Assembly (NCBI GenBank): GCA_003693705.1
Contig: RBZT01000588.1
Location: forward strand, 145,256 to 209,255
DNA from: Polymyxa betae A26-41
Lineage: Eukaryota; Protista; Endomyxa: Phytomyxea
DNA length: 64,000 bases
Direction: 5' to 3'
Shown here: piece by piece, positions 56,703 through 62,066 of the stretch
Numbering within the stretch: position 1 is the stretch's first letter
How the letters are laid out: every line of letters begins with the position of its first letter
The notes under the pieces: model-generated
Databases searched by the model: none
Told to the model about the DNA's origin: nothing
What the model saw: the letters and a program-made list of their open reading frames with translations, nothing else
Made by a program: the position numbers and the translations under genes

Positions 56703-56864
56703 GGTGATATCCAAACGGAATTGCTGAATGAAAGAGCAGCCCCATCCCAACCCCAAAAGAACACTACAACATTTACCGTGATTTGAAGTTTGACAATGCA
56801 AATACATTAATGTTTATTACAAAAACGAAAAGTGGTCTTCGTTTGCTCCATGTACTGAGTATCC

Positions 56865-58421
56865 TCAATTGAGATCAAACAAGTCGTCGTCGTCGTCATC
56901 ATAGTCCAGAAATCGAGAGTCGAAAGAAGTGAACCCGAAGGAATCTACAGACCCGCCTGACAGGCCCCGTTGCCCATAACCAGAACCGACCTCGCTTACA
57001 GAGGTTTTAGACAACCCAGTTCCAATACCATATGAACCAACTCCAAGATTGCCCATAGAGGTTGCAGACAGCCCAGTTCCGACACCAGATAAACCTATTC
57101 CGGCATTGCTCTTAGAGGTTCCAGATAAACCAGTACCGACTCCAGATAAACCGCCAACATTGTTCATTGAGGTTGCAGATAAGCCAGTTGCGCCACCAGA
57201 GAGACCGGCTCCAACATTGGTTATAGAGTCTCTGGATAACCCAGTTCCGATGTTGCTCATAGAATTAACTCCTCCATAGCCTCCAGAAAATCCACCCCCG
57301 AGGCCAAACGTGTTCGAGCCCAGTTGCTGTCCTCCAGTTCCATAAAAGTTCGACGACGATCCCGAAAAGACACCACCAATCCTGTATGGTTGCGACTTCA
57401 CCGAGTAGATACCTCCTTGTCCCAATGAACTACTGCTGCTTACACCAAATCCAGTTCCACCATAACCTCCGACTCCGAAAATTTTGGAGCTGGGGCCCTT
57501 TGCTCCAAGGATGTTTCCACCACGTAAATACGAATTTGACGAGAATGTGATGCCGCTAGTGGGATGGTGTCCGTATAATTTCAGAGAGCCAGCGCCGCCT
57601 GGATAACCACCGCCGTATTTTCCTGCCGCTATGTGAATATGGCTTTTCGTGAATGAGCTGGGACCAGAGCGCTTCGAGGAGGCTTGATTCCCAAACGACG
57701 AGAATGCCTTGCGTCCAGACTTTCCGTTCTTATGAGCGCTAGTTTTCACACGGGCAGAGTTGGATTGGTTTTTCGATGCAGCATTGGCTGCTCCTTGGTC
57801 ATGTAGGTTGAGCTTATTCTGTGCTGTACGTGATCGAGCCTTCAGACCCTTGTTTCTAGCAGCAGCCTTTCGGGCTTCGGAGTCCTTGGACGATGACTTC
57901 GCGGAGGCAGTGTTGTCTTCAAAGCTGTTTGTAACATCGCTGGCTTTCTTGGAGTAAATATTGATGTTCTTGGCCCGGCTGTACCTTTTAGCATGCTTTT
58001 TCGAAGCCTGAGCGTTTCGTTCCTTCTTTTTGGCAGAAGCCGAACCTGCTGCCTTGTTATACAGATTCTTACTAGCGTCATTGCTATCTAATGCCTTGCT
58101 CAGTTTCTTGTTGTGATTCTTATTCGCGGATGCCGCCTTCAAATGTTTCTTCGCAGCTGCGTCCTTGTTCGCTCCTTGTGAATACTGATCATACCCCAAG
58201 TTATCAACATTGTTCTTTTTTAAGGAATAGCCATTGTTTGAGCTGCCTTTGTAAGCCTTGATATCCATGGCATCGTTATTGTCATTGAAGTTTCCATCAC
58301 CATAACCTTCATGGTGGCCATGATGGTGGCGATGGCCTCCATCAACATGGCCCGCCAACGCCACCATCGCCAGAAGCGTCATGGCAAAACAAAGAGTCAT
58401 CAGAGACATTGTAATTTTCAT
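56865..58421 (-). CDS. Secreted structural-type protein A: His-rich N-terminus, Lys/Ala/Asn core, Gly/Ser/Tyr-rich tail
   Basis: Intronless 518 aa; signal peptide MKITMSLMTLCFAMTLLAMVALA; core paralogous to 61098..62066. Confidence 0.88.
   Translation of the reverse strand: MKITMSLMTLCFAMTLLAMVALAGHVDGGHRHHHGHHEGYGDGNFNDNNDAMDIKAYKGSSNNGYSLKKNNVDNLGYDQYSQGANKDAAAKKHLKAASANKNHNKKLSKALDSNDASKNLYNKAAGSASAKKKERNAQASKKHAKRYSRAKNINIYSKKASDVTNSFEDNTASAKSSSKDSEARKAAARNKGLKARSRTAQNKLNLHDQGAANAASKNQSNSARVKTSAHKNGKSGRKAFSSFGNQASSKRSGPSSFTKSHIHIAAGKYGGGYPGGAGSLKLYGHHPTSGITFSSNSYLRGGNILGAKGPSSKIFGVGGYGGTGFGVSSSSSLGQGGIYSVKSQPYRIGGVFSGSSSNFYGTGGQQLGSNTFGLGGGFSGGYGGVNSMSNIGTGLSRDSITNVGAGLSGGATGLSATSMNNVGGLSGVGTGLSGTSKSNAGIGLSGVGTGLSATSMGNLGVGSYGIGTGLSKTSVSEVGSGYGQRGLSGGSVDSFGFTSFDSRFLDYDDDDDDLFDLN
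56990..57260 (-). repeat. Imperfect Gly-rich peptide repeats (GTGLSxTSxxNxGxGLSG)
   Basis: About 5 copies visible in the translation of the 56865..58421 ORF. Confidence 0.8.
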
Positions 58422-58571
58422 TCAGGCTGAATACAGTAAGTGTGAATTGTCGATTTTTTGGTGGGATAGCTCCGGTTCGTTGCCCGCTCGCCTCCGGTTC
58501 CGAGCACGAACCTTCCTCTCATGCCGAAGTTGCCACATGTTTTGCAAGCATTTCCCCTGAGCCTACATCAA

Positions 58572-58583
58572 GCCAGCTGACCG
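58572..58583 (-). promoter_or_regulatory. Candidate shared upstream element CGGTCAGCTGGC (gene A)
   Basis: Identical 12-mer lies in the same relative orientation upstream of paralogue B. Confidence 0.45.
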
Positions 58584-58733
58584 ACCAAATCGCCAATCTG
58601 GAACTAGTGGCTCTTAGGGAAGCGACTGCCGGTACCCATCTAACCTTAGTTTTACGTTTTTAATGTGCTAACTGTAACGTAAGAGTATTGCTCTCCTGTC
58701 AAATGGAAAATCTCACTCTATGCTCTATGCTTT

Positions 58734-59945
58734 CTATTTACTAAGTTTGTCGAGATTAGCCATCTCTTGGGAGCATTTCAATGAAAGGGCCTCGAACCTC
58801 CTCACATGAGCAGAGAACGGCCTGGTTGGACAGCTACTGGTCGCCACATCGGCATCGCTCCCCCATGGGCTCTTGAGCTCCGGTCTTGGTGTATACATCT
58901 TTGATCTAAACGGTGGCGCTTCAAGTATGTTTGGAGTGTATGCTGGAGGATTAATATTCACTTCCGACCGACCCGGAACCAGCTTCATGCTAGCGAGCTG
59001 AGGATCTTCGGGAATTGCTCGGATCTGAAGCGGTATCGGCTGCGGTTCCATTATTCTCGGTACTAAAGAGCCATTCTGAACCATGTGCGATCTGGCAGTT
59101 CGTTGAAGAGGAACCTGTTTGAGCTCGGATAGCTCTAGATTGCGCTTGTGCCAATCGGTGAGCTTGTCGTGGTCGGGATGGTCCCAGACTGTCAAGTTCG
59201 GAGTGGATCGATGCAGCGGCCGACAACGAGTCGATAATTTAGTGGGAGATGCCGGCCTGGCAATGGCCATTAAAGTCGCTAATCGAGCCGCCTCTGAATA
59301 ACATTCTTTTGAAGGCTCGTCTCGATCAAGAAATGGCTCTTGAAACTCGACGACAAGTTCGCGAAAACCGTTCTCGCTACCACGCTCACAATTGATTAGT
59401 AATCGTTGGCGACGAGCGTTGACATCAACACCAAAACTTGTCAGCGAATTGGCGACCTCAGCAGCGGTACGCAAACCAAGATGGAGATCTTTGAACAAAT
59501 TTCGTAACAGGCCTCGTGAAACTTGGGTTGTGTTTGCCCGTAGTTTGCTGTTTTCAGAATCCCATTTATCTCCAAAGATCATATATTGACGAGTATGATC
59601 GAATGAAGTCGATGCAGGCAATGCCACAGGGTTCGATGATATTAAGTCGAAATTATATCTGTCACCATCTGGAATCGTCAACGCATGGAGAAGCCTAGCC
59701 AACGACAAAGGCGGCTTCCTCGCCGTTGTGTAGTATGCATTTGTCAGATGGATCCCTTGGGCTTTCAATGCAGCGCTTAGCTTGGCTGTAGTTATCTCGC
59801 CCAAGTCGTATTTGGAGAAGAGGTCGACGATGATTGCCCGCTTTGAATGGACATTGAGCTTCAATTCGAGCCCGGATTGATGGCAGAACTGGCCAGAAAT
59901 CCCATCGTGACCTACATCAGCCGGTTCGGTAACAGCCATTTGCAT
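58734..59945 (-). CDS. Hypothetical 403-aa protein with two degenerate EF-hand-like modules
   Basis: Intronless ORF; DLFSKYDLGEITTAKLSAALKAQGI and NLFKDLHLGLRTAAEVANSLTSFGV. Confidence 0.6.
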   Translation of the reverse strand: MQMAVTEPADVGHDGISGQFCHQSGLELKLNVHSKRAIIVDLFSKYDLGEITTAKLSAALKAQGIHLTNAYYTTARKPPLSLARLLHALTIPDGDRYNFDLISSNPVALPASTSFDHTRQYMIFGDKWDSENSKLRANTTQVSRGLLRNLFKDLHLGLRTAAEVANSLTSFGVDVNARRQRLLINCERGSENGFRELVVEFQEPFLDRDEPSKECYSEAARLATLMAIARPASPTKLSTRCRPLHRSTPNLTVWDHPDHDKLTDWHKRNLELSELKQVPLQRTARSHMVQNGSLVPRIMEPQPIPLQIRAIPEDPQLASMKLVPGRSEVNINPPAYTPNILEAPPFRSKMYTPRPELKSPWGSDADVATSSCPTRPFSAHVRRFEALSLKCSQEMANLDKLSK

Positions 59946-60102
59946 TCTTGTCAGACGTACATTTGATCGATCTGGTCAAGGTACAGAAGAAACAAGCATT
60001 GTATGGAGACAAAAATTATAACTAAGAACCTTTCAAAAATTAAAATTCAGATTAAGACAGCATACAAAAGACTGGTTATTCTTGGACGGTCAGTAAAGAG
60101 GT

Positions 60103-60727
60103 TTACGACCGATCAACGTCCATTTTATCTTCAGATGTTGTAGGAACATTATCCACGATATCGTCTTTGCGGTTAGACAGACATGTCAATGAATGAAATA
60201 ACAACGACATATCCTTCCTTGTTGAATCCATACGGCGCTGTAGCTGATCATGTTTTTCATTCAGCAATTGGATTTCTGCTTCAAGCGTTGATATGTTATC
60301 CGCCGATTCCCCACGGCTTGGCAGCTGATTGTAAGCTTGGGCCAGAAGTCGATATTGATCGTAACGCCCTTTGGTATCATATGCCTCTTTCAACTCTTCT
60401 CTTAGCACTTGGATCTCCTTGGTTACGGAATCGATCAGGGCCGTATATTTATCATGTTTTTCAGCATACGTTGCGCGCTCTCGCTTGGCGGTTTCAATGA
60501 TTGTATGTGTCTGTGAAATATCGAAAATTAACGTATCCAATTCCGCCAAGAACTCGTCGTTTTTCTCGATGATATCCGGCGACAATAATCTCCTAGCGAG
60601 GGACAGCACCAGATGATCGCGAGCGACGAACCTTTCGGCCGTAATCTGATCTGCGAACGCATCAGGAACCCCGACAACAACACAGCAAGCTTCGACAACG
60701 ACCTGATTCAGACAGTGAAGTCGCCAT
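60103..60727 (-). CDS. THOC7: THO complex subunit 7
   Basis: ERATY...IQVLREELKEA...QYRLLAQAYNQLPSR...RKDMSLLFHSL matches the THOC7/Mft1 pattern. Confidence 0.85.
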
Positions 60728-60905
60728 TGGAGACCTTCTAATACAAAATGAGCGTATATGCGCACTTAAACATCTGCTCTTTCAAATTCGATTCGTGTTA
60801 TTATCCTTTTAAAATTAAGATAAACGTCTCAAACGTCTTTATTGCTTGGCTTTACATTGCTAGGTAATTGGGTAGGCTTGCCGAAATAGTGGTAGGTCGG
60901 TGGGC

Positions 60906-60917
60906 CGGTCAGCTGGC
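60906..60917 (+). promoter_or_regulatory. Candidate shared upstream element CGGTCAGCTGGC (gene B); TATAAA at 61012-61017
   Basis: Same 12-mer as upstream of paralogue A; contains the E-box CAGCTG. Confidence 0.45.
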
Positions 60918-61097
60918 GGCGACGGATGCCGGCGGTGAACTTCGGACCGGGTGGTCGGGCAGGAGATTATGGCATTCGGAACGTATATCGGCCCGAATCG
61001 GAACCGATCGTTATAAAGCCGACGTTTTACGTAGGTCTGCTGCTCATTCCGATATTTGCTTGTCGACAGCAACAAAGAACCTGAACCATTGTCCAAG

Positions 61098-62066
61098 ATG
61101 CGTCTTTCCACAGTGACTTTGTTGCTCGTCGGGGTGGTCCTGGCGTTGAGCGCCATTCCAGCTGAAGCTGGTATTGGACTTGGACATGGTGTCAACAGCA
61201 TCCATGGGCATTCCGGCTCCGGATCCAGCAAGGCTGCCAATGAAAAAGCCGCCCTTGCTAATGCTGCCACCAAGAAGAACGCCGCTGCTTTGAACAGCAA
61301 CTTCGCCCAGTCTACAGCCGCCGCAGCCAAAAACGCTGCTGCCAAGAAGGCATCAAAGGCAGCTGCCGCATCCCAGGCCGTCAAGAAGCACATCAACAAG
61401 AACGCCGCCGCAGCCGCCGCGAAAAAGAGTGCCGCCAGCAAGGCTGCCGCTTCCAAGCTGGCCCAGCTGAAGAAGAAGGCAGCTGCCGCTTCTCGAGTTC
61501 GCACGGCCAAGTACAACCGCGCCAAGAACCTCAACATTTACTCGAAGAAGGCTACTGATGTCGTGAACAGCTTCGTCAACGAGGCCGCCACCGCGAAATC
61601 GGCTGCCGCTGCTGCCGCCAGGAAATCAGCTGCCGCCAAGGCCGCCGCCGTCAACTCCGCCAGGACCAAACGGGCCAACAACCTGAACGCCGCCAAGGCC
61701 GCTCGCAGCCAAGCAGCTTTCAAGTCGGCAGCTAACTCAGCTCATGTCAACTCGGCAGCCAAGAAGGCGGCCAAGAAGGCTCACAAGAACGCGTTCAACA
61801 CCAACTTCGCAGCAGCTAAGAAGGCTGCCAACAAGCGCGCTGCGTTCGCCAAGTTCCACAAGCACGGATTCGGAAAGACAGGATATGGTGCTCATTCTGG
61901 TGGCTGGGGAGGTCTAGGCAGCATGGGCTATGGCATCTGGAGCGGCGGTTACCCATCATCGGTAGGAGTATATGGACTTGGCCAAGGAATTGGTCATCTG
62001 GGATTCGGTGCTGGTAGCGTGGGCAGTTTGGGAGGAGTCGGCCTTGGATTCTCTTCCATGTATTAA
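61098..62066 (+). CDS. Secreted structural-type protein B: Ala/Lys/Asn core, Gly/Tyr-rich tail
   Basis: Intronless; signal peptide MRLSTVTLLLVGVVLALSAIPAEA; strong GCC/AAG/AAC codon bias; paralogue of 56865..58421. Confidence 0.9.
   Translation: MRLSTVTLLLVGVVLALSAIPAEAGIGLGHGVNSIHGHSGSGSSKAANEKAALANAATKKNAAALNSNFAQSTAAAAKNAAAKKASKAAAASQAVKKHINKNAAAAAAKKSAASKAAASKLAQLKKKAAAASRVRTAKYNRAKNLNIYSKKATDVVNSFVNEAATAKSAAAAAARKSAAAKAAAVNSARTKRANNLNAAKAARSQAAFKSAANSAHVNSAAKKAAKKAHKNAFNTNFAAAKKAANKRAAFAKFHKHGFGKTGYGAHSGGWGGLGSMGYGIWSGGYPSSVGVYGLGQGIGHLGFGAGSVGSLGGVGLGFSSMY

What the first reader, a model, noticed from the sequence alone, without database searches (positions are those of the whole stretch)
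56865..62066. Pair of divergent secreted paralogues with a strictly gap-free low-complexity core: candidate new extracellular fibre or spore-wall system
Seen: two intronless genes (56865-58421 minus, 61098-62066 plus) in an intron-rich genome. Both encode signal peptide + His/Gly N-terminus + Lys/Ala/Asn core + Gly/Tyr-rich tail. They share the block YxRAKN[IL]NIYSKKA[ST]DV[TV]NSF. The flanks differ in sequence, yet the spacings are identical by my count: AAAKK to RAKN is 56 aa in both, NSF to N[KN]LN is 34 aa in both, and N[KN]LN to NSA[RH]V is 15 aa in both. Low-complexity sequence normally accumulates indels, so exact register conservation implies a defined elongated structure or in-register co-polymerisation of the two chains. 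Established: Gly/Tyr-rich and His/Lys-rich segments are typical of cross-linked eggshell, oocyst and cuticle proteins. Inference: a two-chain structural polymer for a resting-spore/cyst wall, adhesive or penetration apparatus. I do not recognise the family.
Basis: partly seen in the sequence, partly recalled or inferred. Interest (0 to 1): 0.8.

Follow-up and report, generated by a model that had tools for sequence, protein, structure and literature searches.

The report
Fixed-length helical rod protein family
The beet-root parasite Polymyxa betae has three genes, and an unidentified ocean plankton organism has one, for an undescribed kind of secreted protein: two long alanine/lysine helices of fixed length joined by a conserved hinge, with a glycine/tyrosine tail; it probably helps build a tough coat such as the resting-spore wall, but neither location nor assembly has been shown.

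Summary
Observation confirmed and extended. Genes A (56865-58421, minus) and B (61098-62066, plus) are intact, intronless and transcribed. They align without a gap over 219 residues (34% identity), far above shuffled controls. They are not an adjacent pair: two spliced genes lie between them, and a third paralogue (C) sits on another contig. The His arm is not a family trait. The genome matches Polymyxa betae. One outside relative was found among 1.84 billion proteins: a transcript-like contig, probably from Tara Oceans plankton, with signal peptide, central block, register and Gly/Tyr tail all kept. No Plasmodiophora or Spongospora protein was hit. The core is proline-free and folds as helix-hinge-helix (about 14 + 15 nm), breaking at IYSKKA. 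It has no heptad repeat, but shows a 4.67-residue Ala/Lys rhythm in one phase in all four proteins. Best reading: a cross-linkable extracellular structural rod for the spore wall or sporosorus matrix (0.5), designed like insect chorion and bee silk proteins but a member of neither. Co-polymerisation is untested; a helical rod alone can explain the fixed length. The scan had noted gene C separately.

The parts
56865..58421 (-). Gene A, 518 aa, intronless: signal peptide, His/Gly/Asn arm, helical core, 255-aa Gly/Ser tail with 12 Tyr, acidic C-terminus
   Evidence: one gapless RNA contig 56834-58534 in run X12
58350..58421 (-). Signal peptide of A (about residues 1-24; boundary inferred)
   Evidence: hydrophobic stretch, mean KD 2.51; no later membrane segment; no dedicated predictor available
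57723..58190 (-). Common gap-free core of A (A78-233, equivalent to B70-225)
57918..57983 (-). Conserved central block of A (A147-168), the predicted hinge
56868..57632 (-). Gly/Ser/Tyr tail of A; length and sequence not conserved
61098..62066 (+). Gene B, 322 aa, intronless: signal peptide, short His/Gly arm, Ala 39%/Lys 18% core without Pro or Gly, 67-aa Gly/Tyr tail; the deepest-covered gene of the stretch in three RNA runs
61098..61169 (+). Signal peptide of B (about residues 1-24; boundary inferred)
   Evidence: mean KD 2.97
61305..61772 (+). Common gap-free core of B (B70-225); helices B62-147 and B153-246 in the model
61512..61580 (+). Conserved central block of B (B139-161); the model breaks at B148-152
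61863..62063 (+). Gly/Tyr tail of B
58572..58583 (-). 12-mer CGGTCAGCTGGC, 162 nt upstream of A; possible shared regulatory site or duplication remnant
   Evidence: weak
60906..60917 (+). Same 12-mer, 192 nt upstream of B; absent upstream of C
   Evidence: weak
58734..60000 (-). Intervening spliced gene without Pfam match (not part of the family; upper end approximate)
   Evidence: introns 59063-59114 and 59912-59960
60103..60765 (-). Intervening THOC7-like gene (not part of the family; head-to-head with B; upper end approximate)
   Evidence: PF05615 E 5e-9; intron 60651-60702

Best explanation
A, B and C are subunits of an extracellular structural material of Polymyxa betae, most likely a layer of the resting-spore wall or the matrix that binds spores into a sporosorus. 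Steps: (1) the proteins are secreted (inferred from signal peptides in all four members); (2) the core forms two long alpha-helices of about 14 and 15 nm joined at IYSKKA (predicted; supported by the absence of proline); (3) the helices pack side by side through small residues in a non-heptad bundle, and the conserved central block fixes the register, either as the turn of a folded-back hairpin or as a knot between chains (inferred); this explains why length is conserved while sequence drifts; (4) the disordered Gly/Tyr arms and the many lysines are cross-linked by oxidation, for which the genome has secreted-type tyrosinases (inferred from known eggshell and oocyst chemistry). Whether A, B and C mix in one polymer is open (about 0.3).
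For: Gap-free register in three paralogues and one distant relative at 28-46% identity, while the tails of the same proteins are full of gaps. Synonymous sites near saturation with pN 0.19-0.33 in the central block against 0.35-0.56 over the whole core, so the block is under old purifying selection. Two models give helix-break-helix at pLDDT about 72. Gly/Tyr tail and signal peptide kept in the outside relative. All three genes present in one spliced RNA run; B at depth 106 against 3-16 for its neighbours, and the only gene of the stretch almost fully assembled in two root metatranscriptomes; strongly biased codons in B. At least five tyrosinase loci, two with a hydrophobic leader. P. betae spores have five wall layers and a 'fimbrillar matrix' (PMC1866226). 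The same design (fixed-length core, variable arms, paralogues) builds insect chorion (PMC13252134) and bee silk (PMC12284834).
Against: No stage, localisation or proteomic data. No hit in Plasmodiophora or Spongospora, which also make resting spores, in three word searches and one full HMMER scan. No heptad and no one-face hydrophobic or conservation stripe over the whole core, so the packing mode is unexplained. pTM is only 0.23-0.26, so the relative placing of the helices is not predicted; the mirror test for a hairpin was not significant (p 0.13). All cores are cationic (+22 to +43), which opposes self-packing without a polyanion or cross-links. Contig depth is a poor measure of expression.
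Confidence: 0.5

Rival explanations
1. Soluble cationic single helices that bind a polyanion (nucleic acid, polyphosphate, pectin, membranes), acting as a protectant of dormant spores (LEA-like) or as a secreted effector in the host cell, without forming a covalent polymer.
For: Lys spaced about every 5 residues in poly-Ala spirals round a helix, as in monomeric (AAKAA)n model helices (own knowledge); no hydrophobic face; net charge +22 to +43; a histone H1-like HC2 cluster appears weakly in the Atlas shape search (TM 0.19); orphan helical proteins are the largest cluster of the P. betae secretome (PMC12503489).
Against: A free charged helix gives little reason to conserve exact length over 150-220 residues or to keep a Gly/Tyr tail; no 11-mer LEA period (z -1.6); no LEA or H1 Pfam match; a relative from what is probably open-ocean plankton argues against a land-plant-specific effector.
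Confidence: 0.2
2. Component of the zoospore cyst coat, adhesive or Rohr/Stachel penetration apparatus.
For: Secreted rod of defined length; Lys/Tyr chemistry suits wet adhesives; phytomyxids infect with such an extrusome (PMC3040567); the probable marine relative fits a flagellate stage.
Against: The apparatus is general in phytomyxids, yet no Plasmodiophora or Spongospora hit was found although a 37%-identical relative was detected; no stage data.
Confidence: 0.12
3. Parallel trimeric alpha/beta coiled coil: the central block is a beta-layer like those of phage fibres and trimeric adhesins, and A, B and C could form one heterotrimeric fibre about 30 nm long.
For: IYSK/VFSK has the spacing and chemistry of the second layer in LxxKADKxxVYTKxE (hydrophobic, aromatic, Ser N-cap, Lys), with R-A where K-A stands (PMC4786415); both models break the helix there; three paralogues.
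Against: Position g is Ala in all four proteins where D/E/Q is almost always required; the first layer reads R-A-K-N or R-N-R-N, not K-A-D-K; no flanking heptads; no PHROGs or PDB match.
Confidence: 0.1
4. The core is helical only as a storable precursor and converts to a beta-rich or other non-helical fibre on secretion; the 14/3 rhythm reflects that final fold.
For: The 4.67-residue rhythm is in phase across the hinge and across all four proteins and is not a helical-face period; Ala/Asn-rich silks and egg-capsule proteins undergo alpha-to-beta change (own knowledge).
Against: No Gly/Pro turn residues in the cores of B and C; both models are helical; no significant internal repeat (p 0.41).
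Confidence: 0.08

Closest known systems
Aculeate (honeybee) silk fibroins F1-F4
   Same: Secreted paralogues of low mutual identity, central Ala-rich helical region of about 210 aa flanked by unstructured ends, register kept between paralogues (PMC12284834).
   Different: Bee silk has 24 continuous heptads; here there is no heptad, a 4.67 Ala/Lys rhythm, a conserved break in the middle, a strongly cationic core and Gly/Tyr tails. No sequence relationship found.
Lepidopteran chorion proteins (A/B families)
   Same: One central domain of fixed length without indels, variable flanks, paralogues building a protective coat (PMC13252134).
   Different: The chorion core is 51 aa, Gly-rich and forms amyloid; this core is 150-240 aa, nearly free of Gly, and predicted helical.
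Alpha/beta coiled coils with tandem beta-layers (LxxKADKxxVYTKxE)
   Same: Short extended hydrophobic-aromatic-Ser-Lys motif between two long helices (PMC4786415).
   Different: Acidic g residue and KADK layer missing; no heptads; trimer not shown.
Intermediate-filament proteins (keratins, hagfish thread keratins)
   Same: Fixed-length helical rod with a conserved linker and Gly/Tyr-rich ends (own knowledge); Keratin_2_head matches the tail of C weakly (E 0.011, below cut-off).
   Different: Signal peptide; rod about 200 rather than 310 aa; no heptads; no Filament domain match.
Tyr-rich eggshell and oocyst wall precursors (trematode vitelline proteins, Eimeria gam56/gam82)
   Same: Secreted proteins with Gly/Tyr segments and Lys, hardened by tyrosine oxidation (own knowledge).
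   Different: No sequence match; cross-linking not tested here; those lack this fixed-length hinged core.

Membership tests
Aculeate silk-type coiled coil | Ala-rich helical central region of about 210 aa with unstructured flanks | tested here: met
   Ala 38-39% in B and C, 31% in the outside relative, 17% in A; helices over about 200 aa
Aculeate silk-type coiled coil | Continuous heptad repeat with small residues at a/d | tested here: not met
   3.4-3.8 band over the whole core: p 0.29 (hydropathy), 0.91 (Ala); only arm 2 shows a weak 3.64 peak (p 0.012); control THOC7 coiled coil p 0.002
Aculeate silk-type coiled coil | Hetero-oligomer of the paralogues | not testable with these tools
   Only single chains can be folded here
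Alpha/beta coiled coil (beta-layer) | N-capping layer: hydrophobic-x-[DNTS], then K/R at e | tested here: met
   I-Y-S-K in A, B, C; V-F-S-K in the outside relative
Alpha/beta coiled coil (beta-layer) | D/E/Q at position g; K-A-D-K first layer; flanking heptads | tested here: not met
   g is Ala in all four; first layer R-A-K-N or R-N-R-N; no heptads
Alpha/beta coiled coil (beta-layer) | Parallel trimer | not testable with these tools
   No multimer prediction available
Lepidopteran chorion proteins | Single fixed-length central domain without indels, variable flanks | tested here: met
   (N-arms 39-55 aa, C-terminal parts 53-285 aa around a constant 156-aa core)
Lepidopteran chorion proteins | 51-aa Gly-rich amyloid-forming central domain | tested here: not met
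   0-5 Gly in 156 residues; helical models; no Pfam match
Intermediate filaments | About 310-aa heptad rod (Pfam Filament), no signal peptide | tested here: not met
   No Filament hit, signal peptides present, no heptads
Group 3 LEA proteins | 11-mer amphipathic repeat and LEA Pfam match | tested here: not met
   11-residue harmonic z -1.6; no Pfam hit
Histone H2B | Histone-fold homology beyond a short block | tested here: not met
   PDB scan E 4 over 14 residues; hhalign with this genome's H2B probability 0.9%
Dityrosine/DOPA cross-linked wall proteins | Tyr-rich segment oxidised and cross-linked in a wall | tested here: inconclusive
   Tails hold 5-12 Tyr; tyrosinases are in the genome; the chemistry itself cannot be tested

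The most novel reading that the evidence does not exclude
A, B and C co-assemble into a new kind of secreted helical fibre that uses a 14/3 Ala/Lys rhythm instead of heptads and is registered by one central hinge motif; it forms a named layer of the Polymyxa resting spore, and related fibres occur in marine plankton.
Probability: 0.2. Interest if true: 0.78.

Novelty: new variant of a known kind. Interest (0 to 1): 0.5.

Why it matters
Polymyxa resting spores shelter beet necrotic yellow vein virus and are the form in which parasite and virus persist in soil, yet in the papers searched here no structural wall protein of Polymyxa is named. A small, well-expressed, sequence-unique family gives direct markers for immuno-EM and proteomics of the five wall layers. 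For protein science, a 200-residue helical rod that conserves its length without a heptad repeat is an unexplained packing problem, and a candidate recombinant biomaterial comparable to bee silk.

Tried and rejected
Homology searches that found nothing: Pfam, NCBIfam, PHROGs; three word-index protein searches with B, the three-way alignment and the 45-residue central block of C; ESM Atlas by features for C and the outside relative; JGI metagenome and viral contigs; PDB by sequence and Foldseek; wide structural search gave only generic long helices, Z at most 7.7; Atlas by shape gave nothing informative. P0002 is a fragment of gene B itself, on an 862-nt contig of another assembly, and is not independent. 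Rejected: H2B origin of the central block; heptad, hendecad, 28-residue or LEA 11-mer repeat; a recognisable internal tandem repeat; a conserved KR processing site before the tail (present in C only at that position); a head-to-head A/B pair with a shared bidirectional promoter (two genes intervene). The hairpin mirror test was not significant. The raw-read RNA run X24 held no reads of this stretch. The 12-mer upstream of A and B occurs 7 times in the genome and the other five sites do not precede secreted genes; TCGGAACC lies 82-100 nt upstream of A, B and C but has 876 sites genome-wide.
Full report
Source. The assembly has 27,085,814 bases in 1,001 contigs and about 45% GC. The published Polymyxa betae draft has 1,001 contigs, 27,085,946 bp and 45.1% GC (PMC6328671). 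I take the organism to be P. betae, a plasmodiophorid root parasite of beet.

The observation. Gene A (56865-58421, minus, 518 aa) and gene B (61098-62066, plus, 322 aa) are open and intact. That diagonal runs 219 residues at 34% identity, score 276; the next diagonal scores 78, and shuffles within 20-residue windows reach at most 136. Sliding 30-residue windows prefer offset 8 from B51 to B245, except around B171-200, where A is too divergent to fix the register. So net length between anchors is conserved, and small compensating indels in A cannot be excluded. Ordinary BLASTP does not see the core, which helps explain why the family has gone unnoticed.

Corrections to the picture. A and B are not a head-to-head pair. 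An orphan gene and a THOC7-like gene, both on the minus strand and both spliced, lie between them. A third paralogue, C (302 aa, intronless ORF), lies on contig C606. Four searches with proteins and profiles find exactly these three. B and C align without gaps over 233 residues at 46%; A and C over 195 residues at 28%. The tails of the same proteins need several gaps, which serves as an internal control. Synonymous sites are near saturation in all pairs, so the duplications are old; the central block has pN 0.19-0.33 against 0.35-0.56 for the whole core. With an indel-rate formula recalled from memory, 3-4 indels per pair would be expected in average proteins at this divergence (chance of none 0.02-0.07 per pair). 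The absence of gaps is therefore real but moderate evidence, and it is typical of long helical rods: coiled-coil regions vary 3.6 times less in length than other regions (PMC5082667).

Relatives. The full HMMER scan of 1.84 billion representatives returned two proteins. P0002 is a fragment of gene B itself. P0001 (E 2e-10) comes from a 1,016-nt Logan contig of run ERR1712137 that ends shortly after an AATAAA. An in-frame ATG 15 codons upstream of the called start adds a signal peptide, giving a 270-aa protein. It has a Gly/Tyr/Pro N-arm, the central block, a Gly/Tyr tail, and an ungapped match of 151-158 residues at 30-37% to A, B and C, each far above shuffles. Neighbouring accessions ERR1712117 and ERR1712199 are Tara Oceans samples, the first a eukaryote metatranscriptome, so a marine plankton source is likely; the organism is unknown. 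A marine phytomyxid is a guess. No Plasmodiophora or Spongospora protein was hit, even with the central block alone. This may be loss or missing annotation, and I could not search those genomes directly.

Expression. Run X12 shows three GT-AG intron skips in the intervening genes, so it is RNA. It holds one gapless contig across A (depth 10), one over most of B (depth 106), and a contig whose loose ends are the sequence of C (my rough estimate of its depth is 24). Neighbouring pieces lie at 3-16. Two root metatranscriptomes assemble B almost fully and little else in the stretch. Contig depth is a poor measure of level, and whole roots mix stages, so this shows co-presence and suggests that B is abundant. 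It does not show co-regulation. The X12 strain differs from A at nine bases (six changing a residue, two of them in the core) with no indel.

Anatomy. All four proteins have a hydrophobic leader, no later membrane segment and no cysteine beyond the leader. The common 156-residue core has no proline and 0, 0, 1 and 5 glycines in B, C, the relative and A. AlphaFold2 gives two helices of 96 and 102 residues for C and 86 and 94 for the shorter B fragment, both broken at (I)YSKKA, with pLDDT about 72 and pTM 0.23-0.26. At 1.5 A per residue the arms are about 14 and 15 nm. Whole-length structural matches to straight helices have rmsd 70-80 A, which by geometry means the model is folded back at 30 degrees or less. 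The low pTM and a non-significant mirror test (p 0.13) leave the hairpin unproven. There is no heptad signal over the core, whereas the neighbouring THOC7 coiled coil gives one with the same test (p 0.002). Instead Ala and Lys alternate with a period of 4.67 (hydropathy power 13.0, reached by none of 1,000 shuffles), at phases of -77 to -97 degrees in all four proteins and nearly in phase across the hinge. A multi-class version of the test was weaker (p 0.08), and the four sequences are related, not independent. On an alpha-helix this rhythm winds the lysines round the surface and makes no single binding face. How the helices pack is the main unexplained point.

Mechanism. The best reading is a secreted structural rod. 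The helical arms pack through small residues, the central block sets the register, and the Gly/Tyr arms and lysines are cross-linked by oxidation. The genome has at least five tyrosinase loci, two with a hydrophobic leader. P. betae resting spores have five wall layers and a 'fimbrillar matrix' (PMC1866226). Shown here: gene structure, transcription, register, composition and family size. Predicted: helix-hinge-helix. Inferred: secretion, assembly, cross-linking, stage and location. I give the spore wall or sporosorus matrix reading 0.5, a soluble polyanion-binding protectant or effector 0.2, a zoospore adhesive or penetration part 0.12, a beta-layer trimer 0.1, and an alpha-to-beta precursor 0.08.

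Comparison with known systems. The family works like insect chorion proteins (fixed-length indel-free core, variable arms; PMC13252134) and bee silk (paralogous Ala-rich rods of about 210 aa; PMC12284834), but fails the defining test of each (Gly-rich amyloid core; heptads). The central block half-matches the tandem beta-layer consensus (PMC4786415) but lacks the acidic g residue and the KADK layer. Its likeness to the start of histone H2B helix 2 is at chance level. No paper found describes the family; a structure-based secretome study notes only that orphan helical proteins are the largest P. betae cluster (PMC12503489), and I could not tell whether these genes are in it.

Verdict. A real, undescribed, narrowly distributed family with an unusual but probably structural design; a new variant of a known kind of biomaterial protein. 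Interest 0.5. It would rise if a hetero-oligomer, a wall location or a new packing mode were shown.

Noticed in passing
window 61512-61580 (+); L032:267-656 (-): The central block has the same spacing as the start of histone H2B helix 2 over 14 residues; at chance level against PDB and against this genome's own H2B.
   Followed up: yes
L073, L075 (G000:C846 and C467) and three further loci: At least five tyrosinase (PF00264) loci, two with an N-terminal hydrophobic leader or anchor; candidates for spore-wall tanning or melanin.
   Followed up: partly
window 58734-60000 (-): Orphan gene whose genomic 403-codon ORF contains a 52-nt GT-AG intron (59063-59114) seen spliced at low depth in run X12, which would shift the frame; that strain also has a 9-nt insertion after 59204.
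   Followed up: no
window 58496-58503 (-), 60998-61005 (+); L003 about 91 nt upstream of 654 (reverse): TCGGAACC lies 82-100 nt upstream of all three paralogues; 876 sites genome-wide against 650 for the reversed control. In A it falls inside the RNA contig.
   Followed up: partly
L011 (GCA_000510975.1, AYZY01073384.1): An 862-nt contig of another NCBI assembly matches the 3' part of gene B and its downstream DNA; probably Polymyxa DNA carried into a host-plant assembly (a beet assembly, from memory).
   Followed up: partly
window 56868-56910 (-): A alone ends in an acidic patch (seven Asp in eight residues) after a tail of imperfect Gly/Ser/Thr repeats; it could neutralise the cationic cores or bind metal.
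   Followed up: no
L010:1-106: The leader of the marine relative's contig is rich in short CCATT/CCAAT-like repeats and has no dinoflagellate spliced leader that I could see.
   Followed up: no
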